Source of the DNA: Octopus sinensis | Taxonomy: Eukaryota | NCBI RefSeq assembly: GCF_006345805.1 | Contig: NC_043000.1 | Coordinates: forward strand, 136,276,001-136,340,000 | Direction of reading: 5' to 3' | Length of the DNA: 64,000 nucleotides | Part shown: piece after piece, positions 28,592-63,688 of the stretch | How positions within the stretch are numbered: position 1 is the first letter of the stretch | Layout: each line of letters begins with the position of its first letter | Translations under genes and position numbers: made by a program | Notes under the pieces: model-generated | The model's database searches: none | Told to the model about the DNA's origin: nothing | The model's input: the letters and a program-made list of their open reading frames with translations, nothing else

Positions 28592-28925
28592 AATAAAGTT
28601 GACATTCAAATGTCAGATCAGGATGAAAATTGAGAAGAGGAAGCAACAAGATAGTATGAAAAGCTAGCAAGAGCTTGATGACCTTGTAACAAATTAGTAT
28701 CTCACTAAATCTTGGTAAAGGGTAGTTGGTATTCAAATTAAAAGAAAGGAATCTACTGGAGGCAAAGGTGGAATTTTCTAAGTAACGAACAAAGTCTGCA
28801 GCTTTGTCTTATTTCCACTTATTGTCTGAGTTGCTGTGCTTCTATACTGATGTAGGAGGCCTGTTTGGAGTGACTGGTTTCAGACACTCCTGTGATTAAT
28901 GGCATTTGTTAATTGATATACCTAT

Positions 28926-29964: not shown

Positions 29965-30590
29965 AATGACAGTGGTGGAAGAGAAAAACTTGAAATCTAT
30001 TCAAGAATATTTTTCAATGGATTTTCTGGCAACAACAAAGAGAAGAATTAAACAGATCTTACTAAAGAACTTATTGAAAGTCACAAAAGCATTGGAATAA
30101 ATGTCACTGAAGTTGCACTATTTGTTCTCTCACTTGGAATTCTTTCTACCAAATCTTTCTACCAAATTTCTACCAATTTCTACAAATCTTTCTAGAAATT
30201 TCTATCAAATCTGAAGAATTAATTGAAAGTCACAAAAGCATTGGAATAAATGTCACTGAAGTTGCACTATTTGTTCTCTCACTGGGAATTCTCTCTACCA
30301 AATCTTTCTACCAAATTTCTACCAATTTCTACAAATCTTTCTACCAAACTTCTACCAATTTCTACAAATCTTTCAAGAAATTTCTACCAAACCTGAAGAA
30401 TTGATTGAAAGTCACAAAAGCATTGGAGTAAATGTCACTGAATTTGCACTATTTGTTCTCTCACTTGCAATTCTTTCTACCAAAGCTTGGAGCTGTATCA
30501 GAAAGGCATAATGAACGATTCCAATACAACAAACAATTCCTGGTGAAGCAATACTGGGGAAGGTGAAATGAAACAATGACGAGGTGATGG
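29965..30590 (+). pseudogene. Second Chapaev3/CMC-like transposase relic (C-terminal) with an internally triplicated segment
   Basis: KMTVVEE..NGFSGNNKEKN*TDLTKELIESHKSIG, then MSLNLHYLFSHLQFFLPKLGAVSERHNERFQ..QYWGR*NETM. Unit GAAAGTCACAAAAGCATTGG starts at 30076, 30225 and 30407. Confidence 0.8.
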
Positions 30591-31100
30591 GCAATTAAGT
30601 TTGGGACCTGCTTTGAGAAGAAAGTAGAGGTTACAAGAGACAACGATGGTCCAATGTTCACTTTGGTGCTTATTGATATTTTTGATCCATTGTACCACTA
30701 CTGCTATGTTGCATTATTCATGATTGCTCGTTATATTATAATTAATCGATTTCTATAATTATATTATATAATGCAGTTGAAATTACAATAAATTGTATTA
30801 CAATAAATATTGTGTTTTCATGATTATTATGCAAATCTTTGTTCATATATAAAAAAAACAACAAACTAATGTGCTTTTCATATTCAGCATGTCAAATTTG
30901 ATAGCAAAAACACAAACATGGGAGTAAACCAGAACGTTCATAAAAACCTGTTATTTGGTGTTATATTCTCAAATGAACACAGGTATGGTTGATTGGTTAA
31001 GAAGTTTGTTTCACAATCATGTTCTTTTGAGTTCAAATTTTCTGCTTTAGTCCCAGGCCCAACAATACTTTGTAAGTGAGTTTGTTTAGACAGAAACTAT

Positions 31101-31511
31101 ACTCTTTACTCTTTTACTTGTTTCAGTCATTTGACTGTGGCCATACTGGAGCACTGCTTTTAGTCGAGCAAATCAACCCCAGGACTTATTCTTTGTAAGC
31201 CTAGTACTTATTCTATCAGTCTCTTTTGCTGAACTGCTAGGTTACGGAGATGTAAACACACCAGCATCAGTTGTCAAGCGATCTTGGGAGGACAAACACA
31301 GGCACGCAAACACACACACATACATATATATACATATACATATATACGACAGGCTTCTTTCAGTTTCTGTCTACCGAATCCACTCACAAGGCTTTGGTCA
31401 GCCCGAGGCTATAGTAGAAGACACTTGCCCAAGGTGCCATGCAGTGGGACTGAACCCAGAACCATGTGGTTGGTAAGCAAGCTACTTACCGCACAGCCAC
31501 TCCTGTGCCTA
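31101..31511 (-). mobile_element. SINE family A, full length (degraded plus-strand SINE head at about 30980-31100 abuts it)
   Basis: Reverse complement of consensus. Confidence 0.9.
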
Positions 31512-32428: not shown

Positions 32429-32820
32429 CTTTTTACTTGTTTCAGTCATTTGACTGCGGCCATGCTGGAGCATCACCTTTAGTCGAGCAAATCGACCCTG
32501 GGATTAATTCTTTGTAAGCCCAGTACTTATTCTATCGGTTTCTTTTGCCGAACTGCTAAGTGACGGGGACGTAAACACACCAGCATCGGTTGTCAAGCAA
32601 TGCTAGGGGGACAAACACATACACACAAACACACACACACATATATATATATATACAACAGGCTTCTTTCAGTTTCCATCTACCAAATCCACTCACAAGG
32701 CATTGGTCGACCCGAGTCTATAGCAGAAGACACTTGCCCAAGATGCCACACAGTGGGACTGAACCCGGAACCATGTGGTTGGTTAGCAAGCTACTTACCA
32801 CACAGCCACTCCTGCGCCTA
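32429..32820 (-). mobile_element. SINE family A, full length
   Basis: Reverse complement of consensus. Confidence 0.9.
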
Positions 32821-33777: not shown

Positions 33778-34176
33778 AGGCACAGGAGTGGCTGTGTGGT
33801 AAGTAGCTTGCTTACAAACCATATGGTTCCGGGTTCAGTCCCACTGCATGGCACCTTGGGCAAGTGTCTTCTACTATAGCCTCGGGCCGACCAAAGCCTT
33901 GTGAGTGGATTTGGTAGACGGAAACTGAAAGAAGCCCGTCGCATATATGTATATATATATATGTATATGTGTCCGTGTTTGTCCCCCCCAAGATCGCTTG
34001 ATAACCGATGCTGGTGTGTTCACATCCCCGTAACTTAGCAAAAGATACCGATAGAATAAATACTAGGCTTACAAAGAATAAGTTCTGGGGTCAATTTGCT
34101 CGACTAAAGGCGGTGATCCAGCATGGCTGCAGTCAAATGACTGGAACAAGTATAAGAGTAAAAGAGTAAAAGAGTA
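33778..34176 (+). mobile_element. SINE family A, full length
   Basis: Consensus match with (GTAAAAGA)n tail. Confidence 0.9.
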
Positions 34177-35027
34177 CCATCTTCATCGCTGTCATCGTTG
34201 TCATCGTTGTCGTCATTGCCATTGTTGTCATCGTCGTCGTCGTCATCATCATCCTCATCATCATTTTACATCCACTTTCCATGCTACCATGGATTGAATG
34301 GTTCATCATTGTTAATGTTGATGATTTCTTTTATCAGTTATAAAATCATTCCCAAGATCCTTTGTGATTTACCACAGAGAACACAAACAGTACTCCATTA
34401 ACAGTTACACTTTATTTAAAAGTAGGATTGGAAATTCTCAGAACATTAGTAGATTAATAGATTTTGGAGAGTTAATGTTCCAAACTTAACATTATGGACT
34501 AATGAATAATATAAAAAAAAAATTCATTCTTGAATGTAGTCATTTATTTCAATGTGACACACAGACACACTCACACACATATTATGTGTATGGGCATCTG
34601 TGCATTTCTTTTACTAATACACATCAGTGAAAAATGTAAACATTGGCAAGGAAACAAAACACACACACACACAAACAGATAATAGTGTTTTTCAAATAAG
34701 TCTCTTGAGGTGTTTGTTCAGCATCAAGTTAGGAACTCCTTTGATATTTTGCCATGAGAAATGCATTGAATCTGTGACCGGCCAATCAAAAAACTTGTAT
34801 AACAATAAACTGAATGTATTAAGTTAACAAAGGAAGTGAAAATTTCAGTTCTTCACAAATTATTTATTGTTTATATAATAAAATCAGATACGATGGCTGG
34901 ATAAAGAAAAACAGGAAAATGAGAAGAAAGTTCTTTTCTTAATGGTGGTTGAAACCAAAAGTTTATTTCATGATGTAATTTTGTATGCAGTTATATAGAT
35001 TTAGTTGGTGTTTAGGAGGACAAATAG

Positions 35028-35150
35028 AGATGGGCTTGCCATATCATGCAAATGAAGGACAACAGATGGACTATCAGGGTGACAGAATGGACCACAAGTC
35101 AATGGAAAATATCAAGAGATCAACCAAAGGCAAGATAGCAAGATAATCTC
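35028..35150 (+). mobile_element. RTE-clade LINE C-terminal relic abutting the satellite
   Basis: RWACHIMQMKDNRWTIRVTEWTTSQWKISRDQPKAR*QDNL resembles RTE W.GH..R..DNRWT..VTEW.P....R.RGRP..RW.D. Confidence 0.8.
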
Positions 35151-35164
35151 ACCTGCTATCTGGT

Positions 35165-38100
35165 CCATTCTCCTCTCAAATCCCCCTCTCTGGAATGTTC
35201 AACATTCCTCCCTCCCCTTCCTCCCCTTCTCCTCTAAAATCCCCCTCTCTGGAATGTTCAGCAATCCTTCCTCCCCTTCCTCCCCTTCTCCTCTCAAATC
35301 CCCCTCCCTGGAATGTTCAACATTCCTCCCACCCCTTCCTCCCCTTCTCCTCTAAAATCCCCCTCTCTGGAATGTTCAACATTCCTTTCTCCCCTTCCTC
35401 CCCTTCACCTCTCAAATCTCCCTCTCTGGAATGTTCAACATTCCTCCCTCACCTCCCTCCCATTCTCCTCTCAAATCCCCCTCTCTGGAATGTTCAACAT
35501 TCCTCCCTCCCCTTCCTCCCCTTCACCTCTCAAATCCCCCTCTCTGGAATGTTCAACATTCCTCCCTCCCCTACCTCCCATTCTCCTCTCAAATCCCCCT
35601 CTCTGGAATGTTCAACTTTCCTCCCTCCCCTTCCTCCCCTTCTCCACTAAAATCCCCCTCTCTGGAATGTTGAACATTCCTTTCTCCCCTTCCTCCCCTT
35701 CACCTCTCAAATCTCCCTCTCTGGAATGTTCAACATTCCTCCCTCACATTCCTCCCATTCTCCTCTCAAATCCCCCTCTCTGGAATGTTCAACATTCCTC
35801 CCTCCCCTTCCTCCCCTTCACCTCTCAAATCCCCCTCTCTGGAAAGTTCAACATTCCTCCCTCCCCTACCTCCCATTCTCCTCTCAAATCCCCCTCTCTG
35901 GAATGTTCAACTTTCCTCCCTCCCCTTCCTCCCCTTCTCCTCTAAAATCCCCCTCTCTGGAATGTTGAACATTCCTTTCTCCCCTTCCTCACCTTCACCT
36001 CTCAAATCCCCCTCTCTGGAATGTTCAACAATCCTTCCTCCCCTTCATCCCCTTCTCCTCTAAAATCCCCCTCTCTGGAATGTTGAACAATCCTTCCACC
36101 CCTATCTTCCCTTCTCCTCTAAAATCCCCCTCTCTGGAATGTTCAACATTCCTCCCTCCCCTTCCTCCCATTCTCCTCTCAAATCCCCCTCACTGGAATG
36201 TTCAACATTCCTTTCTCCCCTTCCTCCCCTTCACCTCTCAAATCCCCCTCTCTGGAATGTTCATAATTCCTCCCACCCCTTCCTCCCATTCTCCTCATAA
36301 ATCCTCCTCTCTGGAATGTTCAACATTCCCCCCTCCCCTTCCTCCCCTTCTCCTCTAAAATCCCCCTTTCTGGAATGTTGAAATTCCTTTCACCCCCTTC
36401 CTCCCCTTCACCTCTCAATTCCCCCCTCTGGAATGTTCAACATTCCTCCCTCCCCTTCCTCCCCATCACCTCTCAAATCCCCCACCTCTGGAATGTTCCA
36501 CAATCCTTCCTCCCCTTCCCCTCTAAAATCCCCCTCTCTGGAATGTTGAACATTCCTTTCTCCCCTTCCTCCCCTTCACCTCTCAAATCTCCCTCTCTGG
36601 AATGTTTAACATTCCTCCCTCACCTTCCTCCCATTCTCCTCTCAAATCCCCCTCTCTGGAATGTTCACATTCCTTCCTCCTCCTCCCCTTCCTCCCCTTC
36701 ACCTCTCAAATCCCCCTCTCTGGAATGTTCAACTTTCCTCCCTCCCCTTCCTCCCCTTCTCCTCTAACATCCCCTTCTCTGGAATGTTCAACAATCCTTC
36801 CTCCCCTTCCTCCCCTTCTCCTCTCAAATCCCCCTCTCTGGAATGTTCAACATTCCTCCCTCCCCTCCTCCCCTTCTCCTCTCAAATCCCCCTCTCTGGA
36901 ATGTTCAACAATCCTTCCTCCTTTTCCTCCCCTTCTCCTCTAAAATCCCCCTATCTGGAATGTTCAACAATCCTTCCTCCCCTTCCTCCCCTTCTCCTCT
37001 AAAATCCCCCTCTCTGGAATGTTGAACATTCCTTTCTCCCCTTCCTCCCCTTCACCTCTCAAATCTCCCTCTCTGGAATGTTCAACATTCCTCCCTCACC
37101 TTCCTCCCATTCTCCTCTCAAATCCCCCTCTCTGGAATGTTCAACATTCCTCCCTCCCCTTCCTCCCCTTCACCTCTCAAATCCCCCTCTCTGGAATGTT
37201 CAACATTCCTCCCTCCCGTACCTCCCATTCTCCTCTCAAATCCCCTCTCTGGAATGTTCAACATTCCTCCCACCCCTTCCTTCCCCTTTCCTCTCAAATC
37301 CCCCTCTGGAATGTTCAACATTCCTCCCTCCCCTTCTCCCCTTCTCCTCTAAAATCCCCCTCTCTGGAATGTTCAACATTCCTCCCACACTTCCTCCCAT
37401 TCTCCTCTCAAATCCCCCTCTCTGGAATGTTCAACATTCTTTCTCCCCTTCCTCCCCTTCACCTCTCAAATCCCCTTCTTGGAATGTTCAACATTCTCCC
37501 AACCCATCCTCCCATTCTCCTCTCAAATCCCCCTCTCTGGAATGTTCAACATTCCTCCTCCCCTTCCTCCCCTTCTCCTCTAAAATCCCCCTCTCTGGAA
37601 TGTTCAACAATCCTCCTCCCCTTCCTCCCCTTCTCCTCTCAAATCCCCCTCTCTGGAATGTTCAACATTCCTTTCTCCCCTCCTCCCCTCACTCTCAAAA
37701 TCCCCCTCTCTGGAATGTTCAACATTCCTCACACCCCTTCCTCCATTCTCCTCTCAAATCCCCCTCTCTGGAATGTTCAACATTCATTCCTCCCCTTCCT
37801 CCCATTCTCCTCTCAAATCCCCCTCTCTGGAATGTTCAACATTCCTCCCACCCCTTCCTCCCATTCTCCTCTCAAATCCCCTCTCTGGAATGTTCAACAT
37901 TCCTCCTCCCCTTCCTCCCCTTCTTCTCTAAAATCCCCCTCTCTGGAATGTTCAACATTCCTCCCTCCCCTTCCTCCCCTTCTCCTCTAAAATCCCCCTC
38001 TCTGGAATGTTCAACATTCCTCCTACACCTTCCTCCCATTCTCCTCTCAAATCCCCCTCTCTGGAATGTTCAACATTCCTCCCTCCCCTTCCTCACCTTC

Positions 38101-41100
38101 TCCTCTAAAATCCCCCTCTCTGGAATGTTCAACAATCCTTCCTACCCTTCCTCCCCTTCACCTCTCAAATCCCCCTCTCTGGAATGTTCAAATTCCTTTC
38201 TCCCCTTCCTCCCCTTCACCTCCTCAAATCCCCCTCTCTGGAATGTTCAACATTCCCCCACCCCTTCCTCCCATTCTCCTCTCAAATCCCCCTCTCTGGA
38301 ATGTTCAACATTCCTATCTCCCCTTCCTCCCCTTAACCTCCTCTAAAATCCCCCTCTCTGGAATGTTCAACATTCCTCCCACCCCTTCCTCCCATTCTCC
38401 TCTCAAATCCCCTCTCTGGAATGTTCAACATTTTTTTCCTCCCTCCCTTCCTCCCCTTCCCTCTAAAATCCCCTCTCTGGAATGTTCAACATTCCTCCCT
38501 CACCTTCCTCCATTCTCCTCTCAAATCCCCTCTCTGGAATGTTCAACATTCCTTCTCCTCTTCCTCCCCTTCACCTCTAAAATCCCCCTCTCTGGAATGT
38601 TCAACAATCTTCCTCCCCATCCTCCCCTTCTCCTCTCAATCCCCTCTCTGGAATGTTCAACATTCCTCCATTCCCTTCCTCCCCTTCTCCTCTAAAATCC
38701 CCCCTTCTGGAATGTTGAACAATCATTCCTCCTCTTCCTCTCTTCTCTAAAATCCCCCTATCTGGAATGTTCAACAATCCTCCCCCTTCTCCTCTATAAT
38801 GCCCTCTCTGGAATGTTCAACATTCCTTTCTCCCCTTCCTCCCCTTCACCTCTCAAATCCCCCTCTCTGGAATGTTCAACATTCCTCCCACCCCTTCTCT
38901 CCCATTTCTCCTCTCAAATCCCCCTCTCTGGAATGTTCAACATTCCTCCCTCCCTTCCTCCCCTTTTCTCTAAAATCCCCTCTCTGGAATGTTCAACAAC
39001 TTCCTCCCCTTCCTCCCCTTCTCCTCTCAAATCCCCCTCTCGGGAATGTTCAACATTCCTCCTTCCCCTTCCTCCCTTCTCCTCTAAAATCCCCCTCTCT
39101 GGAATGTTCAACAATCTTCCTCCTCTTCCTCCTCTTCTCTAAAATCCCCCTCTCTGGAATGTTCAACAATCCTCCCCTTCTCTATAATCCCCCTCTCTGG
39201 AATGTTGAACATTCTTTCTCCCCTTCCTCCATTCACCTCTCAAATCCCCCTCTCTGGAATGTTCAACATTCCTCCCTCACCTTCCTCCCATTCTCCTCTC
39301 AAATCCCCCTCTTGGAATGTTCAACATTCCTCCTCCCTTCCTCCCCTTCACCTCTAAAATCCCCCTCTCTGGAATGTTCAACATTCCTCCCTCCGTTCCT
39401 CCCATTCTCCTCTCAAATCCCCCTCCTCTGGAATGTTCAACTTTCCTCCCTACCCTTCCTCCCCTTTCCTCTAAAATCCCCCTCTCTGGAATGTTGAACA
39501 TTCTTTATCCCCTTCCTCCCCTTCTCCTCTCAAATCTCCCTCTCTGGAATGTTCAACATTCCTCCTCCCTTCCTCCCATTCTCCTCTAAAATCCCCCTCT
39601 CTGGAATGTTCAACATTCCTCCTCCCCTTCACCCTCTCATATCCCTCCTCTCTGGAATGTTCAACATTCCTCCTCCCCTTTCTCCATCTTCCTCTCAAAT
39701 CCCCCCTCTGGAATGTTCAACATTCCTCCTCCCCTTCTCCCCTTCTCCTCTCAAATCCCCTCTCTGGAATGTTCAACATTCCTCCTCCCTTCCTCCCCTT
39801 CTCCTTCAAATCCCCTCTCTGGAATGTTCAACATTCCTTCCTCCCCTTCCTCCCCTTATCCTCTCAAACCCCCCTCTCTGGAATGTTCAACATTCCTTTC
39901 TCCCCATCCTCCCCTTCACCTCTCAAATCCCCCTCTCTGGAATGTTCAACATTCCTCCCACACCTTCCTCCCTTCCCATTCACCTCTCAACCCACCTCTC
40001 CGGAATGTTCAACATTCCTTTCTCCCCTTCCTCCCCTTCACCTCTCAAATCCCCCTCTCTGGAATGTTCAACATTCCTCCCACCCCTTCCTCCCATTCTC
40101 CTCTCAAATCCCCTCTCTGGAATTTTCAACATTCCTCCCTCCCCTTCCTCCCCTTCTCCTCTAAAATCCCCCCTCTCTGGAATGTTCAACAATCCTTCCT
40201 CCCCTTCCTCCCCTCTCCTCTCAAATCCCCCTCTCTGGAATGTTCAACATTCCTCCCTCCTCTTCCTCCCCTTCTCTAAAATCCCCCTCTCTGGAATGTT
40301 CAACATTCCTCCTACACCTTCCTCCCATTCTCCTCTCAAATCCCCCTCTCTGGAATGTTCAACATTCCTCTCACACCTTCCTCCCATTCTCCTCACAAAA
40401 CCCCCTCTCTGGAATGTTCAACATTCCTCCCACACCTTCCTCCCATTCTCATCTCAAATCCCCCTCTCTAGAATGTCAACATGCCTTCTTCTTTCTCCTT
40501 CTCTCACTCCCCCTTCCTCCCCTTCACCTCTCAAATCCCCCTCTCTGGAATGTTCAACATTCCTCCCACCCCTTCCTCCCCTTCTCCTCTAAAATCCCCC
40601 TCTCTGGAATGTTCAACAATCCTTCCTCCCCTTCCTCCCCTTCTCCTCTCAAATCCCCCTCTCTGGAATGTTCAACATTCCTCCCTCCCCTTCCTCCCCT
40701 TCTCTTCTAAAATCCCCCTCTCTGGAATGTTCAACATTCCTCCCACACCTTCCTCCCATTCTCCTCTCAAATCCCCCTCTCTGGAATGTTCAACATTCCT
40801 TTCTCCCCTTCCTCCCCTTCACCTCTCAAATCCCCCTCTCTGGAATGTTCAACATTCCTCCCACCCTTCCTCCCATTCTCCTCTCTCAAATCCCCCTCTC
40901 TGGACTGCTCGACATTCCTCCTCCCCTTCCTCCCCTTCTCCACTAAAATCCCCCTCCTGGAATGTTCAACAATCCTCCCACCCCTTCCTCCTCCGCTTCT
41001 CCTCTCAAATCCCCCTCTCTGGAATGTTCAACATCCTCCATTCCCTCCTTCCTCCCCTTCTCCTCTAAATCCCCCTCTCTGGAATGTTCAACAATCCTTC

Positions 41101-44100
41101 CTCCTCTTCCTCCTCCTTTCTCTAAAATCCCCCTATCTGGAATGTTCAACAATCCTCCCCTTCTCTATAATCCCCCTCTCTGGAATGTTGAACATACCTT
41201 TCTCCCCTTCCTCCCCTTCACCTCTCAAATCTCCCTCTCTGGAATGTTCAACTTCCTCCCTCACCTTCCTCCCATTCTCCTCCTCTCAATCCCCCTCTCT
41301 GGAATGTTCAACATTCCTCCCTCCCCTTCCTCCCCTTCACCTCTCAAATCCCCCTCTCTGGAATGTTCAACATTCCTCCCACACCTTCCTCCCATTCTCC
41401 TCTCAAATCCCCCTCTCTGGAATGTTCAACATTCCTTCCTCCCCTTCCTCCCCTTCACCTCTCAAATCCCCCTCTCTGGAATGTTCAACATTCCTCCCAC
41501 CCCTTCCTCCCATTCTCCTCTCAAATCCCCCTCTCTGGAATGTTCAACATTCCTCCCTCCCCTTCCTCCCCTTCTCCTCTAAAATCCCCCTCTCTGGAAT
41601 GTTCAACATTCCTCCCTCCCCTACTTCCCATTCTCCTCTCAAATCCCCCTCTCTGGAATGTTCAACTTTCCTCCCTCACCTTCCTCCCATTCTCCTCTCA
41701 AATCCCCCTCTCTGGAATGTTCAACATTCCTCCCTCCCCTTCCTCCCCTTCACCTCTCAAATTCCCCTCTCTGGAATGTTCAACATTCCTCCCTCCCCTA
41801 CATCCCATTCTCCTCTCAAATCCCCCTCTCTGGAATGTTCAACTTTCCTCCCTCCCCTTCCTCCCCTTCTCCTCTCAAATCCCCCTCTCTGGAATGTTCA
41901 ACATTCCTCCCACACCTTCCTCCCATTCTCCTCTCAAATCCCCCTCTCTGGAATGTTCAACATTCCTTTCTCCCCTTCCTCCCCTTCACCTCTCAAATCC
42001 CCCTCTCTGGAATGTTCAACATTCCTCCCACCCCTTCCTCCCATTCTCCTCTCAAATCCCCCTCTCTGGAATGTTCAACATTCCTCCCTCCCCTTCCTCC
42101 CCTTCTCCCCTAATATCCCCCTCTCTGGAATGTTCAACAATCCTTCCTCCCCTTCCTCCCCTTCCTCCCCTCCTCCCCTTCTCCTCTCAAATCCCCCTCT
42201 CTGGAATGTTCAACATTCCTCCCTCCCCTTCCCCTTCTCCTCTAAAATCCCCCTCTCTGGAATGTTCAACATTCCTCCTACACCTTCCTCCCATTCTCCT
42301 CTCAAATCCCCTCTCTCTGGAATGTTCAACATTCCTTCTCCTTCTCTCTCCCTCCCCTTCCTCCTCCCCTTCACCTCTCCCACCTCCTCAACTCCCCTCT
42401 CTGGAATGTTCAACATTCCTCCCACCCCTTCCTCCCATCTCCTCTCAATCCCCCTCTCTGGAATGTTCAAATTCCTCCCTCCCTTCCTCCCCCTTCTCCT
42501 CTAAATCCCCCTCTCTGGAATGTTCAACATTCCTCCCTCACCTTCCTCCATTCTCCTCTCAAATCCCCCAGTCTGGAATTCAACATTCCTCCCCCCCCTT
42601 CCTCCCCTTCTCCCTTCACCTCTCAAATCCCCCTCTCTGGAATGTTCAACATTCCTTTCTCCCTCCCCTCCTCCCCTTCACCTCTCAATCTCCCTCTCTG
42701 GAATGTTCAACATTCCCCCTCACCTTCCTCCCATTCTCCTCTAAATACCCCTCTCTGGAATGTTCAACATTCCTCCCTCCCTTCCTCCCCTTCACCCCTC
42801 AAATCCCCCTCTCTGGAATGTTCAACATTCCTCCCCCCTCCCGTACCTCCATTCTCCTCTCAAATCCCCCTCTCTGAATGTTCAACATTCCTCCCTCCCC
42901 TCCTCCCCTCCTCCTTCTCCTCTAAAATCCCCTCTCTGGAATGTTGAACATTCCTTTCTCCCCTTCCTCCCCTTCACCTCTCAAACTTCCTCTCTGGAAT
43001 GTTCAACATTCCTCCCTCCACCCTTCCTCCCATTCTCCTCTCAAATCCCCCTCTCTGGAATGTTCAACATTCCTTCCTCCCCTTCCTCCCCTTCAACTCT
43101 CAAATCCCCCTCTCTGGAATGTTCAACATTCCTCCCTCCCCTCCCTACCTCCCATTCTCCTCTCAAATCCCCTCTCTGGATGTTCAACATTCCTCCTCCC
43201 CTTCCTCCCCTTCTCCTCTAAAATCCCCCTCTCTGGAATGTTCACATTTCCCATTCCCCTTCCTCCCATTCTCCTCTCTAATACCCTCTCTTGAATGTTC
43301 AATATTCCTCCTTCCCTTCCTCCCCTTCTCCTCTAAAATCCCCCACTCTCTGGAATGTTCAACATTCCTCCCACACCTTCCTCCCATTCTCCTCTCAAAT
43401 CCCCCTCTCTGGAATGTTCAACATTCCTTTCTCCCCTCCTCCCCTTCCTCCCTTTACCTCTCAAATCCCCCTCTCTGGAATGTTCAACATTCCTCCCTCC
43501 ACCCTCCTCCCATTCTCCTCTCAAATCCCCCTCTCTGGAATGTTCAACATTCCTCCCTCCCCCCCCCCCTTCTCCTCTAAAATCCCCTCTCTGGAATGTT
43601 CAACAATCCTTCCTCCCCTTCCTCCCCCCTTCACCTCTCAAATCCCCCTCTCTGGAATGTTCAACATTCCTTTCTCCCCTTCCTCCACTTCACCTCTCAA
43701 ATCCCCCTCTCTGGATTGTTCAACATTCCTCCAACACCTTCCTCCCCCATTCTCCTCTCAAATCCCCCTCTCTGGAATGTTCAACATTCCTTTCTCCCCT
43801 TCCTCCCATTCACCTCGCAAATCCCCCTCTCTGGAATGTTCAACATTCATCCCACCCCTTCCTCCCCTTCTCCTCTAAAATCCCCCTCTCTGGAATGTTC
43901 AACATTCCTCCCTCCCTTTCCTCCCCTTCTTCTCTAAAATCCCCCTCTCTGGAATGTTCAACAATCGTTCCTCCCCTTCTCCTCTCAAATCCCCCTCTCT
44001 GGAATGTTCAACATTCCTCCCTCGCCTTCCTTCCTCCCCCTTCTCCTCTAAATCCCCCTCTCTGGAATGTTCAACATTCCTCCCACACCTTCCTCCCATT

Positions 44101-47100
44101 CTCCTCTCAAATCCCCTTCTCTGGAATGTTCAAAATTCCTATCTCCCCTTCCTCCACTTAACCTCTCAAATCCCCCTCTCTGGAATGTTCAACATTCCTC
44201 CCACCCCTTCCTCCGATTCTCCTCTCAAATCCCCCTCTCTGGAATGTTCAACATTCCTCCCTCCGCTTCCTCCCATTCTTCTCTAAAATCCCCCTCTCTG
44301 GAATGTTCAACATTCCTGCTACACCTTCCTCCAATTCTCCTCTCAAATCCCCCTCTCTGGAATGTTCAACATTCCTTTCTCCTCTTCCTCCCCTTCACCT
44401 CTAAAATCCCCCTCTCTGGAATGTTCAACAATACTTCCTCCCCATCCTCCCCTTCTCCTCTCAAATCCCCCTCTCTGGAATGTTCAACATTCCTCCATTC
44501 CCTTCCTCCCCTTCTCCTCTAAAATCCCCCCCTCTGGAATGTTCAACAATCCTTCCTCCTCTTCCTCCTCTTCTCTAAAATCCCCCTATCTGGAATGTTC
44601 AACAATCCTCCCCTTCTCCTCTATAATGCCCCTCTCTGGAATGTTGAACATTCCTTTCTCCCCTTCCTCCCCTTCACCTCTCAAATCCCCCTCTCTGGAA
44701 TGTTCAACATTCCTCCCACACCTTCCTCCCATTCTCCTCTCAAATCCCCCTCTCTGGACTGTTCGACATTCCTCCCTCGCCTTCCTCCCCTTCTCCTCTA
44801 AAATCCCCCTCTCTGGAATGTTCAACAATCCTTCCTCCCCTTCCTCCCCTTCTCCTCTCAAATCCCCCTCTCTGGAATGTTCAACATTCCTCCATTCCCT
44901 TCCTCCCCTTCTCCTCTAAAATCCCCCTCTCTGGAATGTTCAACAATCCTTCCTCCTCTTCCTCCTCTTCTCTAAAATCCCCCTATCTGGAATGTTCAAC
45001 AATCCTCCCCTTCTCTATAATCCCCCTCTCTGGAATGTTGAACATTCCTTTCTCCCCTTCCTCCCCTTCACCTCTCAAATCTCCCTCTCTGGAATGTTCA
45101 ACATTCATCCCTCACCTTCCTCCCATTCTCCTCTCAAATCCCCCTCTCTGGAATGTTCAACATTCCTCCCTCCCCTTCACCTCTCATATCCCCCTCTCTG
45201 GAATGTTCAACATTCCTCCCTCCCCTACTTCCCATTCTCCTCTCAAATCCCCCTCTCTGGAATGTTCAACTTTCCTCCCTCCCCTTCCTCCCCTTCTCCT
45301 CTCAAATCCCCCTCTCTGGAATGTTCAACATTCCTCCCTCCCCTTCCTCCCCTTCTCCTCTAAAATCCCCCTCTCTGGAATGTTCAACATCCTTCCTCCC
45401 TCCCCCCCTCCTCCCCTTCACCTCTCAAATCCCCCTCTCTGGAATGTTCAACATTCCTCCCACACCTTCCTCCCATTCACCTCTCAAATCCCCCTCTCTG
45501 GAATGTTCAACATTCCTTTCTCCCCTTCCTCCCCTTCACCTCTCAAATCCCCCTCTCTGGAATGTTTCAATTCCTTCCTCCCACCCCACCTTCCTCCCAT
45601 TCTCCTCTCAAATCCCTCCTCTCTGGAATGTTCAACATTCCTCCCTCCCCTTCCTCCCCTTCTCCTCTAAAATCCCGCCTCTCTGGAATGTTCAACAATC
45701 CTTCCTCCCCTTCCCCCTTCTCTCCTCCCCTCTCGTCTCAAATCCCCCTCTCTGGAATGTTCAACATTCCTCCCTCCTCTTCCTCCCCTTCTCTCAAATC
45801 CCCCTCTCTGGAATGTTCAACATTCCTCCTACACCTTCCTCCCATTCTCCTCTCAAATCCCCCTCTCTGGAATGTTCAACATTCCTCCCACACCTTCCTC
45901 CCATTCTCCTCACAAAACCCCCTCTCTGGAATGTTCAACATTCCTTTCTCCACTTCTTCTCCCCCTTCACCTCTCAAATCCACCTCTCTGGAATGTTCAA
46001 CATTCCTCCCCCACCTTCCTCCCTCCCATCTCATCTCAAATCCCCCTCTCTGGAATGTTCAACATTCCTTCTCCCCTTCCTCCCCTTCACCTCTCAAATC
46101 CCCCTCTCTGGAATGTTCAACATTCCTCCCACCCCTTCCTCCCCTTCTCCTCTAAAATCCCCCTCTCTGGAATGTTCAACAATCCTTCCTCCCCTTCCTC
46201 CCCTTCTCCTCTTAAATCCCCCTCTCTGGAATGTTCAACATTCCTCCCTCCCCTTCCTCCCCTTCTCTTCTAAAATCCCCCTCTCTGGAATGTTCAACAT
46301 TCCTCCTCTCCTCCCCCCCTTCCTCCCATTCTCCTCTAAAATCCCCTCTCTGGAATGTTCAACATTCCTTTCTCCCCTTCCTCCGCTTCTCCTCTCAAAT
46401 CCCCCTCTCTGGAATGTTCAACATTCCTCCATTCCCTTCCTCCCCTTCTCCTCTAAAATCCCCCTCTCTGGAATGTTCAACAATCCTTCCTCCTCTTCCT
46501 CCTCTTCTCTAAAATCCCCCTATCTGGAATGTTCAACAATCCTCCCCTTCTATATAATCCCCCTCTCTGGAATGTTGAACATTCCTTTCTCCCCTTCCTC
46601 CCCTTCACCTCTCAAATCCCCCTCTCTGGAATGTTCAACATTCCTCCCTCCCTTCCTCCCATTCTCCTCTCAAATCCCCCTCTCTGGAATGTTCAACATT
46701 CCTCCCTCCCCTTCCTCCCCTTCACCTCTCAAATCCCCCTCTCTGGAATGTTCAACATTCCTCCCACATCTTCCTCCCATTCTCCTCTCAAATCCCCCTC
46801 TCTGGAATGTTCAACATTCCTTTCTCCCCTTCCTCCCCTTCACCTCTCAAATCCCCCTCTCTGGAATGTTCAACATTCCTCCCACCCCCCCTTCCTCCAT
46901 TCTCCTCTCAAATCCCCCTCTCTGGAATGTTCACATTCCTCCCTCCCCCCCTCCCCTTCCTCCCCTCTCCTCTAAATCCCCCTCTCTGGAATGTTCACAA
47001 CATTCCTCCCTCCCCTACTTCCCATTCTCCCTCAAATCCCCCTCATCCCCTCTCTGGAATGTTCAACATTCCCTCCCTCACCTTCCTTCCCATTCTCCTC

Positions 47101-48825
47101 TCAAATCCCCCTCTCTGGAATGTTCAACATTCCTCCCTCCCCTTCCTCCCTCCTCCCCTTCACCTCTCAAATTCCCCTCTCTCGAATGTTCAACATTCCT
47201 CCTCCCCCTACATCCCATTCTCCTCTCAAATCCCCCTCTCTGGAATGTTCAACTTTCCTCCCTCCCCTTCCTCCCCTTCTCCTCTCAAATCCCCCTCTCT
47301 GGAATGTTCAACATTCCTCCCACACCTTCCTCCCATTCTCCTCTCAAATCCCCCTCTCTGGAATGTTCAACATTCCTCCCTCCGCTTCCTCCCCATTCTT
47401 CTCTAATCCCCCTCTCTGGAATGTTCAACATTCCTGCTACCCTTCCTCCCTTCTCCTCTCAAATCCCCCTCTCTGGAATGTTCAACATTCCTTTCCCTCT
47501 TCCTCCCCTTCACCTCTAAAATCCCCCTCTCTGGAATGTTCAACATCTTCCTCCCCTTCCTCCCCTTCTCCTCTCAAATCCCCCTCTCTGGAATGTTCAA
47601 CATTCCTCCCTTCCTTCCTCCCCTTCTACTCTAAAATCCCCCTCTCTGGAATGTTCAACATTCCTCCTCCTCTTCCCTCCTCTTCTCTAAAATCCCCCTA
47701 TCTGGAATGTTCCACATCCTCCCCTTCTCTATAATCCCCCTCTCTGGAATGTTGAACATTCCTTCCTCCCCTTCCTCCCCTTCACCTCTCAAATCTCCCT
47801 CTCTGGAATGTTCAACATTCCTCCCTCCCCTTCCTCCCCTTCTCCTCTCAAATCCCCCTCTCTGGAATGTTCAACATTCCTTTCTCCCCTTCCTCCCCTT
47901 CACCTCTCAAATCCCCCTCTCTGGAATGTTCAACATTCCTCCCACCCCTTCCTCCCATTCTCCTCTCAAATCCCCCTCTCTGGAATGTTCAACATTCCTC
48001 CCTCCCCTTCCTCCCCTTCTCCTCTAAAATCCCCCTCTCTGGAATGTTCAACATCCTTCCTCCCCTTCCTCCCCTTCTCCTCTCAAATCCCCCTCTCTGG
48101 AATGTTCAACATTCCTCCCTCCCTTCCTCCCCTTCTCCTCTAAAATCCCCCTCTCTGGAATGTTCAACATTCCTCCTACCCCTTCCTCCCATTCTCCTCT
48201 CAAATCCCCCTCTCTGGAATGTTCAACATTCCTCCCCCCTTCCTCCCCCTTCTCCTCTCAAAATCCCCCTCTCTGGAATGTTCAACAATCCTTCCTCCCC
48301 TTCCTCCCCTTCTCCTCTCAAATCCCCCTCTCTGGAATGTTCAACATTCCTTCCTCCTTTCCTCCCCTTCCTCCCCTTCACCTCTCAACCCCCTCCTGGA
48401 ATGTTCAACATTCCTCCCCCCTTACTCCCCCCTTCTCCCTTCTCTCTCAAATCCCCCTCTCTGGAATGTTCAACATTCCTATCCTCCCTTCCTCCCCTTC
48501 TCCTCTCAAATCCCCCTCTCTGGAATGTTCAACATTCCTCCCACCCCTTCCTCCCCTTCTCCTCTCAAATCCCCCACTCTCTGGAATGTTCAACATTCCT
48601 CTCCCTCCCCTTCCTCCATTCTCCTCTAAAATCCCCCTCTCTGGAATGTTCAACATTCCTCCCTCCTCCCCTTCCTCCTCCTCCTCTCCTCTCAAAATCC
48701 CCCTCTCTGGAATGTTCACATTCCTTTCTCCTCTTCCTCCCCTCTTCCTCCCCTTCACCTCTAAAATCCCCCTCTCTGGAATGTTCAACAATCTTCCTCC
48801 CCTTCCTCCCCTTCTCCTCTCAAAT
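35165..48825. repeat. Tandem satellite array, 59-bp monomer, about 230 copies, truncated by an assembly gap
   Basis: Consensus GGAATGTTCAACATTCCTCCCTCCCCTTCCTCCCCTTCTCCTCT(A/C)AAATCCCCCTCTCT. Successive starts are 59 bp apart in clean parts. Copy number is length/59, not an exact count. Confidence 0.99.
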
Positions 48826-48925
48826 NNNNNNNNNNNNNNNNNNNNNNNNNNNNNNNNNNNNNNNNNNNNNNNNNNNNNNNNNNNNNNNNNNNNNNNNNNN
48901 NNNNNNNNNNNNNNNNNNNNNNNNN
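48826..48925. other. Assembly gap (100 N placeholder)
   Basis: Exactly 100 Ns. Confidence 1.
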
Positions 48926-49111
48926 AAGAACCTCTTGTTTAATTGTAAACAAATAAAATTCTCTTAATCCATTTTAAAATAACTGGTTGTTTCAAAATAT
49001 TTTATTTGTCAAGTAACTAGTGTGACTACTTCTGTTGGCTTCTAATTAAACAAAGTAACCTTTGCCACAAATGTAACTGATACAATAATAATGTGAATAA
49101 GTGAATCTTGT

Positions 49112-49303
49112 AAAGATCTGGAAATAGAGATAGCATGAATGTTGGTCCTGAATAGAGACACAACACCTATAATAGTAGATGCTTTGGGAACAATGAAAAA
49201 ATCATGCAGATAAATACATGATGGCAGGACTTAGAAACATGCATAACATGCAGAAAATAGCACTGCTATGCACGGCAAGAATATTACACTGGATAGTTTC
49301 AAT
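49112..49303 (+). mobile_element. R4/Dong-like LINE, C-terminal REL-endonuclease relic
   Basis: KDLEIEIA*M..TPIIVDALGTMKK..NMQKIALLCTARILHWIVSI. Confidence 0.82.
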
Positions 49304-49704
49304 ACTCTTTTACTTGTTTCAGTCATTTGACTGCATTAATGCTGGAGCACCACCTTTAGTTGAATCAAATTGACCCCATGACTTATTCTTTGTAAGCCTG
49401 GTACTTATTCTATCGGTCTCTTTTGCTGAACCGCTAAGTTACGGGGACCTAAACACACCAGCATCGGTTGTCAAGTGATGTTAGGAGGACAAACACAGAT
49501 ACACATCATATACACACACATACATATATATATATATATACATATATACAATGGGCTTCTTTCAGTTTCCATCTACCAAATCCACTCACAAGGCTTTGGT
49601 CGGCCTGAGGCTATAGTAGAAGACACTTACCCAAGGTGCCACGCAGTGGGACTGAACCTGGAACCACGTGGTTGGTAAGTAAGCTACTTGCCGCACAGCC
49701 ACTC
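49304..49704 (-). mobile_element. SINE family A, near full length
   Basis: Reverse complement of consensus. Its tail abuts the end of the LINE relic. Confidence 0.9.
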
Positions 49705-50399: not shown

Positions 50400-50836
50400 A
50401 CTCTTTTACTCTTTTATTTGTTTCAGTCATTTGACTGCGGCCATGCTGGAGCACTGCCTTTAGTCAAGCAAATCGACCCCAAGACTTATTCTTTGTAAGC
50501 CCAGTACTTATTCTATCGGGGTCTTTTTGCCAAACCACTGAGTTATGGGGATGTAAACACACCAGTATCGATTGTCAAGCGATGTTGAGGGGACAAACAC
50601 AGACACACAAACATACACATATATATACATATACATATATACAATGGGTTTCTTTCAGTTTCCATCTACCAAATCCACTCACAAGGCTTTGGTCGGCCCG
50701 AGGCTATAGTAGAAGACACTTGCCCAAGGTGTCACACAGTGAGACTGAACCTGGAAACATGTAGTTGGTAAGCAAGCTACTTACCACACAGCCACTCCTG
50801 TGCCTATACTTACAACACAGCCACTCCTGTGCCTAT
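50400..50836 (-). mobile_element. SINE family A with a tandemly duplicated 29-bp head
   Basis: ACTTACMACACAGCCACTCCTGTGCCTAT at 50779-50807 and 50808-50836. Confidence 0.9.
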
Positions 50837-51979: not shown

Positions 51980-52398
51980 AGGAGGGGCTGTGTGGTAAGT
52001 AGCTTGCTTACCAACCACATGGTTTCGGGTTCAGTCCCACTGCATGATACCTTGGGCAAGTGTCTTCTACTATAGCCTCGGGCTAACCAAAGCCTTGTGA
52101 GTGGATTTGGTAGGCGGAAACTGAAAGAAGCTTGTTGTATATATGTATAGATATTTCAATATATTTCACATTTCAATATGTGACCACGTGTGTACTGTTG
52201 GCGATTTTCTTTCTCAGTCTTCCCTTCCTTGGACCTTCCCCTTTCCTATGTTTCTGATGAAGAGCGCTCCACTCAAAACGTTAAATCTTCCTTCTTTCTT
52301 TCCTTTCCCGAGCATCCAATAACAATACACTTGTTCCACGTCCTTGCGTTGTTGTATGTTCACTTTGTTCATGTTTGGATTAACTATATATGTGTGTG

Positions 52399-52477
<79 letters not shown>

Positions 52478-52680
52478 CTTGTGTTTGTCCCCCCAACATC
52501 ACTTGACAACCGATGCTGGTGTGTTTACGTCCCCCTTAATGTAGTAGTTCGGCAAAAGAGACTGATAGAATTAGTACTAGGCTTACAAAGAATAAATCCT
52601 GGGGTTGATTTGCTCGACTAAAGGATGTGCTCCAGCATGGCCACGGTCAAATGACTGAAACAAGTAAAAGAGTAAAGAGA
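51980..52680 (+). mobile_element. SINE family A interrupted by a foreign insert, with an expanded central (TG)n
   Basis: Head 51980-52145, insert about 52165-52385, (TG)n 52390-52475, 3-prime half to 52680. Confidence 0.88.
52165..52385 (+). mobile_element. Penelope-like element terminal fragment with a decayed minimal hammerhead core
   Basis: CTGATGA-A-GAGC-GCTCC-ACTC-AAAA-CGTT at 52254-52282. Two G-to-A changes away from CTGATGA..GAGC/GCTC..GAAACGT. Confidence 0.55.
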
Positions 52681-53161
52681 GTAACATTATACTGTAATAT
52701 TTAGGTCATACTCACTTAATAAACCTACTCTTCCACACTAGATTAACATGGCTTGGCAGAGAGATGAAGTTCACAGTCATACCCATACTTTGTTAAATTC
52801 TTCGGCATCCAAACATGGGTGAGGAAAAGATCAAGCCATGGTTAGTGGAGAGAACGTGTTGTGGCCTTCATCTAGCAGCTGACTGAACATATGCAAGGAG
52901 GAGGAATGTACATATGAATGTATGTATGTATAACATTATTTAGTTTTATTTCAAAATTTCTTACTAATAGAGAAAGAGCTGGTTTCTAACCTAGATCCAA
53001 GGCTCCTTTATTGGAATTTCAACATCAACAACCGGGTATTTTTGTATGTTTTATATATGTATGTATGTATGTATCTATGTATGTATATGTGCAGATTTGT
53101 GTGTTTTTTATGCTTGTATTCTCATGCATATAGCTGCATGTCAAGACATGTACATATATAC

Positions 53162-53431: not shown

Positions 53432-53461
<30 letters not shown>

Positions 53462-53533
53462 TGTATGTATGTATGTATGTATGTATGTATGTATGTATGT
53501 ATGTATGTATGTATGTATGTATGTATGTATGTC
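53432..53533. repeat. Perfect (TATG)n microsatellite
   Basis: Direct reading. Confidence 0.98.
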
Positions 53534-61234: not shown

Positions 61235-61326
<92 letters not shown>

Positions 61327-61357
61327 TGTGTCTGTTGTGTGTGTGTGTGTGTGTGTT
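60910..61357. repeat. Long degenerate (TG)n
   Basis: Direct reading. Confidence 0.97.
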
Positions 61358-63644: not shown

Positions 63645-63687
<43 letters not shown>

Positions 63688-63688
63688 G

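What the first reader, a model, noticed from the sequence alone, without database searches (positions are those of the whole stretch)
35165..48825. 13.7-kb array of a 59-bp monomer, each with a perfect 17-bp palindrome in a pyrimidine-only strand
Seen: the monomer is GGAATGTT-C-AACATTCC (8-bp arms, 1-nt centre) plus about 42 bp of C/T with one short A run. The consensus has 28 C and only 3 G per 59 bp on the plus strand. The palindrome, especially its left arm, varies much less than the pyrimidine linker, which absorbs most substitutions and indels. Inference: a conserved dyad at fixed spacing in a variable linker is the layout expected of a protein-binding or structural array (centromeric, heterochromatic or scaffold-like). 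I do not recognise this satellite, but I cannot exclude that it is already described.
Basis: partly seen in the sequence, partly recalled or inferred. Interest (0 to 1): 0.8.

Follow-up and report, generated by a model that had tools for sequence, protein, structure and literature searches.

The report
Ordinary 59-bp octopus satellite repeat
This is a real tandem array of at least 13.7 kb made of a 59-bp C/T-rich unit in transposon-rich octopus DNA, and it behaves like ordinary satellite/minisatellite DNA: the eye-catching 17-bp palindrome is not preserved as a palindrome, only its left half and the bases upstream of it are unusually invariant.

Summary
The array is real. It spans 35165-48825 with about 232 units of 59 bp, and 0 copies occur elsewhere in the window. 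Its right end is a 100-N scaffold gap (48826-48925), so 13.7 kb is a minimum. The host is an octopod: the window shares an abundant SINE with Octopus vulgaris.

An anchor-free wraparound alignment shows that the invariant element is an asymmetric ~26-bp block (AAATCCCCCTCTCTGGAATGTTCAAC). It is not the dyad.
- Left arm: 99.4% match. Right arm: 94.0%. Remaining positions: 91.6%.
- The right arm's indel load equals that of the variable linker.
- The exact palindrome survives in 142 units (61%).
- Of 124 changed arm pairs, 0 are compensated.
- Linker variability sits mostly at 7 amplified biallelic sites and in a slippage-prone internal 9-bp sub-repeat.
- After matching for base, only the left arm keeps a deficit of substitutions. 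For rare variants this is about 2.3-fold (p = 0.025).

Classical non-B-DNA features are weak or absent. The hairpin is -5.4 kcal/mol, the consensus has no canonical G4/i-motif, and there are no mirror repeats.

No relative was found in any accessible database or paper, but no animal genome or repeat library could be searched.

Verdict: a new member of a known kind. Function is undemonstrated.

The parts
35165..48825 (+). Tandem array of about 232 units of a 59-bp C/T-rich monomer (satellite or large minisatellite). The first recognisable partial unit starts at about 35163-35168 and the first full unit at 35190.
   Evidence: TRF period 59, score 9685-18114. Wraparound alignment to the cyclic consensus gives 232 units. 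Mean pairwise unit identity is 0.879.
35192..35208 (.). First copy of the 17-bp palindrome GGAATGTTCAACATTCC, as an example. 142 exact copies occur in the array.
   Evidence: As single-stranded DNA it folds into a 7-bp stem with a 3-nt loop, -5.4 kcal/mol, z = -5.3.
35308..36015 (+). Local higher-order repeat of 5 units (295 bp). Unit types run ...IECOH IECOH...
   Evidence: The lag-5 diagonal 35308-35720 vs 35603-36015 has 97.6% identity. There is no array-wide higher-order periodicity: lag identities are 0.873-0.887.
41137..41947 (+). Copy A of the longest internal multi-unit duplication (14 units). It begins with a 43-bp short unit.
   Evidence: 97.6% identity to 46524-47357. Order-shuffled controls give runs of at most 10 units.
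46524..47357 (+). Copy B of the 14-unit internal duplication.
42142..42181 (+). Local expansion of the linker's internal 9-bp sub-repeat (CCTTCCTCC/CCTCCCCTT type), 4.6 copies. The counterpart is a set of 43-bp units that lack about 13-16 nt of this zone (39154, 41137, 44987, 46524, 47702).
   Evidence: TRF period 9. Sequence and short units are listed. Indels concentrate at positions 12-42.
48826..48925 (.). Run of 100 N, a scaffold gap that truncates the array.
33813..34193 (-). Nearest SINE copy on the left. The family is shared with Octopus vulgaris.
   Evidence: Aligns to O. vulgaris OX597820.1 (L141 2935-3377) at 72.5% over 447 bp. The translated SINE hits only O. vulgaris proteins.
49303..49677 (+). 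Nearest SINE copy on the right, in the opposite orientation to the left one.
   Evidence: 76.3% over 414 bp to L141.

Best explanation
The feature is a satellite (large-minisatellite) DNA family. About 232 or more head-to-tail copies of a 59-bp, strongly strand-asymmetric (C/T-rich) unit sit in SINE- and transposon-rich DNA of an octopod genome, with no recognisable genes nearby.

Shown:
- The array expands and is partly homogenised by unequal exchange and replication slippage.
- Evidence for this is a local 5-unit higher-order repeat, a 14-unit internal duplication, unit lengths of 42-84 bp, and gain or loss of an internal 9-10-bp sub-repeat in the linker.

Inferred:
- The 17-bp palindrome was a property of the founding monomer and is carried along by amplification. 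It is not maintained as a dyad, because its right arm decays like the linker and is never repaired by compensating changes.
- Most of the contrast between core and linker comes from three things. C and T in the polypyrimidine tract change 4-10 times more often than A and G. The sub-repeat slips. A handful of variants have been copied into many units.

What remains unexplained is a modest deficit of substitutions in the left arm and the bases just upstream of it (block AAATCCCCCTCTCTGGAATGTTCAAC). This is the only hint of sequence constraint.
For: - Array anatomy.
- Right end is a gap.
- Asymmetric conservation: left arm 99.35%, right arm 93.97%, rest 91.59%.
- Best-preserved 17-mers start at positions 53-57 with 172-178 copies, against 142 for the palindrome. 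GGAATGTT occurs 221 times and AACATTCC 160 times.
- 0 compensated and 124 broken arm-pair changes.
- Seven biallelic sites (21, 22, 24, 26, 37, 41, 47), each with one dominant alternative base in 32-70 units, carry most of the linker 'variation'.
- Substitution rate per position by base: C 7.2%, T 4.9% and A 1.0% outside the palindrome; G 0.4%, all three G positions lying inside the palindrome. The spectrum is C>A 233, C>T 181, T>A 157.
- Indels per position: left arm 2.0, right arm 14.6, positions 20-42 13.8, positions 43-59 plus 1-2 5.2.
- Sub-repeat CCCTCCCCTT/CCTCCCCTT, with a 9-bp expansion at 42142-42181 and 43-bp contraction units.
- Local higher-order repeat and 14-unit duplication exceeding the shuffle null.
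- No edge-to-centre divergence gradient.
- Context: at least 12 SINE copies, no tRNA, no Rfam family, and no Pfam domain above threshold among the five flanking ORF fragments I selected and scanned.
Against: - Base-matched substitutions in the left arm are 5 observed against 18.4-39 expected. For rare variants (3 units or fewer), which are closer to independent events, it is 5 against 11.7 expected, Poisson p = 0.025. Some constraint on the left half-site, or a local mutational cold spot, is not excluded.
- Only one array of unknown true length was examined. Nothing is known about copy number elsewhere in the genome, chromosomal position or chromatin.
- Some 1-bp length changes in C-runs may be sequencing errors, not biology. 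For example the C5 run reads as C4 in 16 of 198 cases.
Confidence: 0.7

Rival explanations
1. Protein-binding array. A sequence-specific DNA-binding protein recognises the invariant ~26-bp block or its GGAATG half-site, so the array acts as a binding platform or sink. The protein would work like a CENP-B-type satellite binder or a TEAD/Scalloped-type factor. The monomer carries the TEAD M-CAT element CATTCCT at positions 14-20 and an inverted CATTCC in the left arm.
For: - Deficit of substitutions in the left arm after base matching.
- A contiguous, nearly invariant block spans positions 54-59 plus 1-10.
- M-CAT is given as 5'-CATTCCT-3' in PMC7547805. That paper's reference list includes a title reporting cooperative TEF-1 binding to repeated GGAATG-related elements with restricted spacing and orientation.
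Against: - The exact M-CAT 7-mer lies in the right arm, which is the decaying arm (94% match, 160 exact copies against 221 for the left arm).
- Spacing varies, with a standard deviation of 4.3 bp.
- The rare-variant deficit is small (p = 0.025) and G positions could not be base-matched.
- No motif library or binding data were available, so the TEAD match is a short-motif resemblance only.
Confidence: 0.15
2. Structural dyad satellite. The palindrome extrudes as a cruciform or hairpin and marks centromeric or heterochromatic chromatin, as proposed for dyad-rich centromeric satellites.
For: - Hairpin of -5.4 kcal/mol per unit on either strand, z = -5.3 and -4.6.
- Dyad density 0.21 against 0.06 in composition-matched shuffles.
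- The framework is Kasinathan and Henikoff 2018 (PMC5889037).
Against: - 0 of 124 arm changes are compensated, and 37-39% of units have lost the perfect dyad.
- The right arm is no better conserved than the linker.
- Absolute dyad density equals that of the ordinary flanks, 0.23-0.24.
- A 7-bp stem is marginal for extrusion from duplex DNA (general knowledge).
- The assembled array is small for a regional centromere.
Confidence: 0.06
3. Non-B DNA from strand purity. The C-rich strand forms i-motifs, the G-rich strand forms G-quadruplexes, or the polypyrimidine tract forms H-DNA. This would drive instability and expansion as in human G-rich minisatellites such as CEB1.
For: - 105 pure pyrimidine runs of 25 nt or more.
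- Four C-tracts per unit. With loops allowed up to 25 nt, 127 four-tract motifs are found.
- C>A is the commonest change, and it corresponds to G>T on the G-rich strand.
- CEB1 precedent: PMC2673046 and PMC3486850.
Against: - Only 11-12 canonical motifs (loops up to 7-12 nt) in about 232 units. The consensus needs a 14- or 23-nt loop.
- No mirror repeat with arms of 8 nt or more in the consensus, and only one of 10 nt or more in the whole array, so intramolecular triplex formation is unlikely.
Confidence: 0.05
4. Repetitive protein-coding exon. ORFs of up to 788 aa, rich in proline, serine and leucine, run through the array.
For: Long + strand ORFs.
Against: - The period of 59 is not divisible by 3.
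- All three + frames are equally open, with 33-35 stops per 4553 codons, as expected from the low A and G content. The - strand has 179-199 stops.
- Frequent indels are not multiples of three.
- No homologue in two protein searches, including an exhaustive one of 1.84 billion representatives.
Confidence: 0.01
5. Assembly artefact. A collapsed or mis-joined repeat was created by the assembler next to a gap.
For: The array abuts a 100-N gap. Homopolymer-length noise is present.
Against: - 232 units with structured, non-random variation: subfamily markers, a local higher-order repeat and nested duplications.
- A clean unique left junction.
- The existence of the repeat is not in doubt. Only its length and exact internal order are.
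Confidence: 0.03

Closest known systems
Satellite DNA / large GC-rich minisatellites (e.g. human CEB1, CEB25, HRAS1 minisatellites; PMC3486850, PMC2673046)
   Same: - Head-to-tail units of tens of bp in arrays of kilobases to tens of kilobases.
- Strong purine/pyrimidine strand asymmetry with a G-rich strand.
- Internal variant units and length heterogeneity, consistent with unequal exchange and slippage.
   Different: - The consensus lacks a canonical short-loop G4 motif.
- Each unit carries a 17-bp palindrome.
- Subtelomeric location and population hypervariability, typical of the human examples, are unknown here.
- The host is a cephalopod.
Dyad-symmetry-rich centromeric satellites (Kasinathan and Henikoff 2018, PMC5889037)
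   Same: A short dyad (under 10 bp per arm) recurs in every satellite unit. It is enriched over composition-matched shuffles (0.21 vs 0.06).
   Different: - The dyad is not maintained: no compensation, and the right arm decays.
- Density is not above the genomic flanks.
- There is no evidence of centromeric location or CenH3 association.
CENP-B box in alpha satellite (a 17-bp protein-binding motif at monomer spacing)
   Same: A nearly invariant motif of 17-26 bp recurs once per unit within otherwise more variable satellite DNA.
   Different: - The CENP-B box is not a palindrome, and its function is backed by binding data.
- Here no binding protein is known, and the conservation signal is weak after base matching.
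- The comparison is drawn from general knowledge plus PMC5889037.
TEAD/Scalloped M-CAT sites (5'-CATTCCT-3'; PMC7547805)
   Same: Exact CATTCCT at monomer positions 14-20, and an inverted CATTCC (GGAATG) in the left arm.
   Different: - This is a 6-7-bp match with no binding test.
- The exact 7-mer lies in the less conserved arm.
- Known M-CAT elements are single or few sites in enhancers, not kilobase arrays.
Human satellite II/III (GGAAT)n and polypurine/polypyrimidine simple satellites such as Drosophila AAGAG (from memory)
   Same: A GGAAT pentamer is present. One strand is pyrimidine-rich.
   Different: Those are 5-bp simple repeats. This is a complex 59-bp unit with a single GGAAT per arm. 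There is no sequence homology.

Membership tests
Satellite / tandem-repeat DNA | Head-to-tail repetition of a unit, many copies, one orientation | tested here: met
   TRF period 59, about 232 units, all on one strand.
Satellite / tandem-repeat DNA | Signs of concerted evolution: shared variant subfamilies, higher-order or segmental duplication | tested here: met
   7 biallelic marker sites, a local 5-unit higher-order repeat at 97.6%, and a 14-unit duplication at 97.6% against a shuffle maximum of 10.
Satellite / tandem-repeat DNA | High genomic abundance or multiple long arrays | not testable with these tools
   No animal genome or read set is searchable. The only array seen is cut by a gap. 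No other copy occurs in the window.
Minisatellite (GC-rich, strand-asymmetric type) | Unit of about 10-100 bp, array of about 0.5-30 kb, G-rich/C-rich strand asymmetry | tested here: met
   59-bp unit, 13.7 kb assembled, C 45.9% against G 5.3%. The true length is unknown.
Minisatellite (GC-rich, strand-asymmetric type) | Length hypervariability between individuals | not testable with these tools
   Single assembly only.
Centromeric satellite | Association with CenH3/CENP-A, or position at the primary constriction | not testable with these tools
   No chromatin or cytogenetic data. No literature on octopus centromere repeats was found.
Centromeric satellite | Dyad symmetry enriched over the genomic background (Kasinathan-Henikoff criterion) | tested here: inconclusive
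   Enriched over composition-matched shuffles (0.21 vs 0.06) but not over the flanks (0.23-0.24).
Structure-constrained palindrome (cruciform/hairpin element) | Pairing kept by compensating changes; both arms equally conserved | tested here: not met
   0 compensated and 124 broken changes. Left arm 99.35% against right arm 93.97%.
H-DNA (intramolecular triplex) tract | Homopyrimidine mirror repeat, arms of about 10 nt or more | tested here: not met
   No mirror repeat of 8 nt or more in the consensus. One of 10 nt or more in the whole array.
G-quadruplex / i-motif repeat | Four tracts of 3 or more G (or C) with short loops (up to 7-12 nt) in each unit | tested here: not met
   11-12 motifs in about 232 units. 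Only with loops of 15-25 nt do 81-127 appear.
Protein-binding-site array (CENP-B-box-like / TEAD M-CAT) | Motif conserved beyond the neutral expectation | tested here: inconclusive
   Left arm rare variants 5 against 11.7 expected, p = 0.025. The right arm, which holds the exact CATTCCT, is not conserved.
Protein-binding-site array (CENP-B-box-like / TEAD M-CAT) | Demonstrated binding by the protein | not testable with these tools
   Needs EMSA, pull-down or ChIP.
Protein-coding tandem repeat | Period divisible by 3, one open frame, homologues | tested here: not met
   Period 59. All three + frames are equally open. No homologues.

The most novel reading that the evidence does not exclude
The nearly invariant ~26-bp box (AAATCCCCCTCTCTGGAATGTTCAAC), with its GGAATG half-site, is the recognition site of a sequence-specific octopus protein. 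The repeat is abundant at a defined chromosomal compartment, either (peri)centromeric or heterochromatic. It would then be the first sequence-defined candidate centromere- or heterochromatin-associated satellite with a binding box in a cephalopod.
Probability: 0.1. Interest if true: 0.6.

Novelty: new member of a known kind. Interest (0 to 1): 0.25.

Why it matters
I found no published description of cephalopod satellite DNA or centromere sequences in the searchable literature. A well-characterised satellite family with a defined invariant box would therefore be a practical FISH or CUT&Tag probe and a starting point for octopus chromosome biology.

For the genome scan, the lesson is methodological.
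- A striking palindrome in a consensus does not show a conserved dyad.
- Conservation has to be measured without anchoring on the motif.
- It has to be matched for base composition.
- It has to be counted as events, not as cells, because satellite variants are copied many times.

The array also generates spurious ORFs of up to 788 aa that could mislead gene callers.

Tried and rejected
1. Segmentation anchored on CTGGAATGTT. I rejected it for conservation estimates because it forces the left arm to look conserved, and replaced it with wraparound DP.
2. Array-wide higher-order repeat of 3 or 5 units, suggested by higher TRF scores at periods 177 and 295. It is not supported: lag identities are flat at 0.873-0.887, with only local blocks.
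3. BLAST self-comparison of the array failed because of HSP culling. I replaced it with a unit identity matrix.
4. Protein route to relatives.
   - The word-indexed search gave no hit, with the 8000-candidate limit reached.
   - The exhaustive HMMER search gave one spurious lysine-rich repeat protein, P0003.
   - Exact-ORF look-ups of one array ORF and two flank ORFs found nothing.
5. DNA scans.
   - The 21-mer block gave 0 hits in the metagenome, prokaryote-genome and viral collections.
   - The 17-mer gave 68, 70 and 2 single-copy chance hits and no arrays.
   - These collections hold no animal genomes, so absence says nothing about other octopods.
6. Rfam and tRNA scans of the window found nothing.
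7. Literature. No paper contains the 17-mer; the single hit was a 14-mer in a mouse perforin paper. No cephalopod satellite or centromere description was found. The 2015 octopus genome paper is not held.
8. Origin from a neighbouring transposon. The left flank (about 35019-35160) reads like a LINE ORF2 C-terminal tail from memory, but Pfam gives nothing and there is no second copy in the window. This is unverified.
9. A crude regex count of sub-repeat copies per unit correlates only weakly with unit length (r = 0.21). It is not used as evidence.
10. CpG depletion (19 observed against 334 'expected') is not meaningful, because the founding unit simply has no CG.


Full report
**1. What is there**

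Tandem Repeats Finder reports a single array at 35168-48825 with period 59 and scores of 9685-18114. Rows at periods 118, 177 and 295 describe the same array. Reading the sequence confirms it.

- GC content rises to about 0.51 and GC skew falls to about -0.79 across exactly this interval.
- Cutting the array gives 231-232 units. Of these 114 are exactly 59 bp long, and the range is 42-84 bp.
- The consensus is CTGGAATGTTCAACATTCCTCCCTCCCCTTCCTCCCCTTCTCCTCTCAAATCCCCCTCT, with 29 C, 19 T, 8 A and 3 G. It contains GGAATGTT-C-AACATTCC.
- The right end is not a biological boundary. It runs straight into 100 N at 48826-48925. So 13.7 kb is a minimum, and the far junction is unknown.
- The left junction is unique sequence.
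- No monomer, even a degenerate one, occurs in the other 50 kb of the window.

**2. Where it comes from**

The window is AT-rich eukaryotic DNA full of microsatellites. It has no tRNA or Rfam family and no convincing gene.

A SINE of about 420 bp occurs at least 12 times.
- Its translation hits only two 'Hypothetical predicted protein [Octopus vulgaris]' entries, at 76-78% identity.
- The corresponding O. vulgaris DNA (OX597820.1, locus L141) aligns to the window copies at 72-89% identity.

The host is therefore an octopod. I did not fix the species.

**3. Is the palindrome conserved?**

My first segmentation was anchored on the left arm, so it could not be used to judge conservation there. 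I realigned the whole array to the cyclic consensus by wraparound dynamic programming, with no anchor.

| Region | Match to consensus |
|---|---|
| Left arm (positions 3-10) | 99.35% |
| Centre C (position 11) | 93.1% |
| Right arm (positions 12-19) | 93.97% |
| Remaining 42 positions | 91.59% |

The invariant stretch is asymmetric. It runs from about position 48 through 59 and on to position 14, giving AAATCCCCCTCTCTGGAATGTTCAAC.

Counting exact 17-mers in the raw sequence gives the same picture.
- Windows starting at positions 53-57 survive in 172-178 copies.
- The palindrome window survives in 142 copies.
- GGAATGTT occurs 221 times and AACATTCC 160 times.
- 146 of 232 aligned units keep the perfect dyad.
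- Among the 124 arm pairs that differ from the consensus, none is compensated.

**4. Why the linker looks variable**

- Most substitutions sit at seven sites (21, 22, 24, 26, 37, 41, 47). Each has one dominant alternative base, present in 32-70 units. These are variants copied along with their units, and they do not represent many independent events.
- Variability depends on the base. Outside the palindrome, C changes at 7.2% per position, T at 4.9% and A at 1.0%. G changes at 0.4%, but all three G positions lie inside the palindrome. The spectrum is C>A 233, C>T 181, T>A 157. The palindrome holds all the G and most of the A.
- Positions 21-39 are an internal direct repeat (CCCTCCCCTT CCTCCCCTT). 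It is seen expanded at 42142-42181 and contracted in the 43-bp units.
- Indels per position are 2.0 in the left arm, 14.6 in the right arm, 13.8 at positions 20-42, and 5.2 at positions 43-59 plus 1-2.

Matching for base gives the following.

| Region | Observed substitutions | Expected, 7 marker sites excluded | Expected, marker sites included |
|---|---|---|---|
| Left arm | 5 | 18.4 | 39.0 |
| Right arm | 55 | 37.5 | 79.9 |
| Whole palindrome | 76 | 63.0 | 135.5 |

Using only rare variants (3 units or fewer), which are closer to independent events, the left arm shows 5 against 11.7 expected (Poisson p = 0.025).

So the dyad as such is not conserved. Half of the 'linker' is as conserved as the core. 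A modest deficit of change in the left arm and its upstream flank remains.

**5. How the array evolves**

- Mean pairwise unit identity is 0.879.
- There is no array-wide higher-order period.
- There is a local 5-unit repeat at 35308-36015 (97.6%).
- There is a 14-unit duplication, 41137-41947 vs 46524-47357 (97.6%). It exceeds the longest run in order-shuffled controls, which is 10 units.
- No divergence gradient runs from edge to centre.

This is the usual signature of unequal exchange and slippage in satellite DNA.

**6. Structural readings**

- Single-stranded, the palindrome folds into a 7-bp stem with a 3-nt loop at -5.4 kcal/mol, well beyond shuffles.
- Dyad density (arms of 5 or more, spacer under 20) is 0.21 against 0.06 in dinucleotide shuffles. 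The ordinary flanks score 0.23-0.24. The dyad is notable only against the array's own skewed composition.
- Canonical four-tract G4/i-motif patterns with loops up to 12 nt occur only 12 times in about 232 units. The consensus needs a 14- or 23-nt loop.
- There is no homopyrimidine mirror repeat of 8 nt or more in the consensus, so classical H-DNA is unlikely.

**7. Protein-binding reading**

The monomer contains the TEAD M-CAT element CATTCCT (PMC7547805) at positions 14-20, and an inverted CATTCC in the left arm. From memory, GAAnnTTC within GGAATGTTC also resembles a two-unit heat-shock element.

These are short-motif resemblances and were not tested. The exact M-CAT lies in the decaying arm. 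The reading stays open at low probability because of the residual conservation of the left block.

**8. Not coding**

ORFs of up to 788 aa cross the array. Several facts argue against coding.
- The period is not a multiple of 3.
- All three + frames are equally open, with 33-35 stops per 4553 codons. The - strand has 179-199.
- Two protein searches, one of them exhaustive, found no relative.

**9. Is it known?**

- No paper in the library contains the 17-mer.
- Searches for cephalopod or octopus satellite and centromere descriptions found nothing relevant.
- DNA scans of the accessible collections found only chance single copies.
- Neither animal genomes nor Dfam/Repbase could be searched, so prior description cannot be excluded.

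**10. Verdict**

This is a genuine and, as far as I could check, undescribed satellite or large-minisatellite family in an octopod genome. It is a new member of a known kind. The inference from a 'conserved dyad at fixed spacing' is not, because the dyad is not conserved as a dyad and the spacing varies (58.6 +/- 4.3 bp). Function is undemonstrated. The most useful follow-ups are genome-wide abundance and position, cross-array constraint, FISH with CenH3 mapping, and a binding assay on the 26-bp box.

Noticed in passing
window 48826-48925: A run of exactly 100 N (a scaffold gap) directly abuts the array. The assembler could not traverse the repeat, so the length and the right junction are unknown.
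   Followed up: yes
window 7417-7797, 8517-8887, 13586-13832, 15303-15682, 28224-28593, 31100-31475, 32431-32788, 33813-34193, 49303-49677, 50400-50770, 52009-52689, 55885-56245: At least 12 copies of one ~420-bp SINE, in both orientations and often followed by a (TATA/TGTG)n tail. They are 72-89% identical to a copy on Octopus vulgaris chromosome OX597820.1. This makes up roughly 7% of the window.
   Followed up: partly
window 56340-57760: A second complex tandem repeat, GC-rich (about 49%). The unit is about 393 bp in 2.3 copies. Nested inside are 39-bp sub-repeats (TGACACTTGTGAAGACCTGTTGAGGCAGAGGCAAGTGTG, which themselves contain the dyad CAAGTGT-GTG-ACACTTG) and 62-bp sub-repeats (57540-57731). 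Units are separated by (AAATC)n. There is no Rfam match.
   Followed up: partly
window 35195-48967 (+ strand): Spurious proline/serine/leucine-rich ORFs of up to 788 aa (45153-47519) run through the array, because the C/T-rich strand rarely forms stop codons. They are a trap for gene callers.
   Followed up: yes
window 24041-24474: Another strand-asymmetric C-rich tandem repeat (194-bp unit, about 2.2 copies, flanked by CCA/TCA triplet runs). It is unrelated in sequence to the 59-bp satellite.
   Followed up: no
window 30065-30488: A 149/182-bp tandem duplication with nested 11-bp (TCTACCAAATT) and 33-bp sub-repeats.
   Followed up: no
window 1535-1660; 53432-53532; 60977-61356; 61673-62478; 63646-63934: Long microsatellites. 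(AGA)42 and (TATG)25 are both 100% perfect. There are also (TG)~192, (GTAT)~204 and (AT)~145.
   Followed up: no
window 38-343 (+): An ORF fragment with a weak, sub-threshold Pfam RVT_1 match (E = 0.03, 14.5 bits against a cut-off of 29.6). It is probably a decayed retroelement reverse transcriptase.
   Followed up: partly
window ~35019-35160 (+, frame of 34302): Immediately left of the array the translation reads RWACHIMQMKDNRWTIRVTEWT...PKAR*QDNL. From memory this resembles the C-terminal tail of LINE ORF2 proteins, so the array may have arisen in or beside a LINE 3' end. Pfam finds nothing, and there is no second copy in the window.
   Followed up: partly
window 58880-59219: A 171-bp unit repeated twice at 93% identity.
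   Followed up: no
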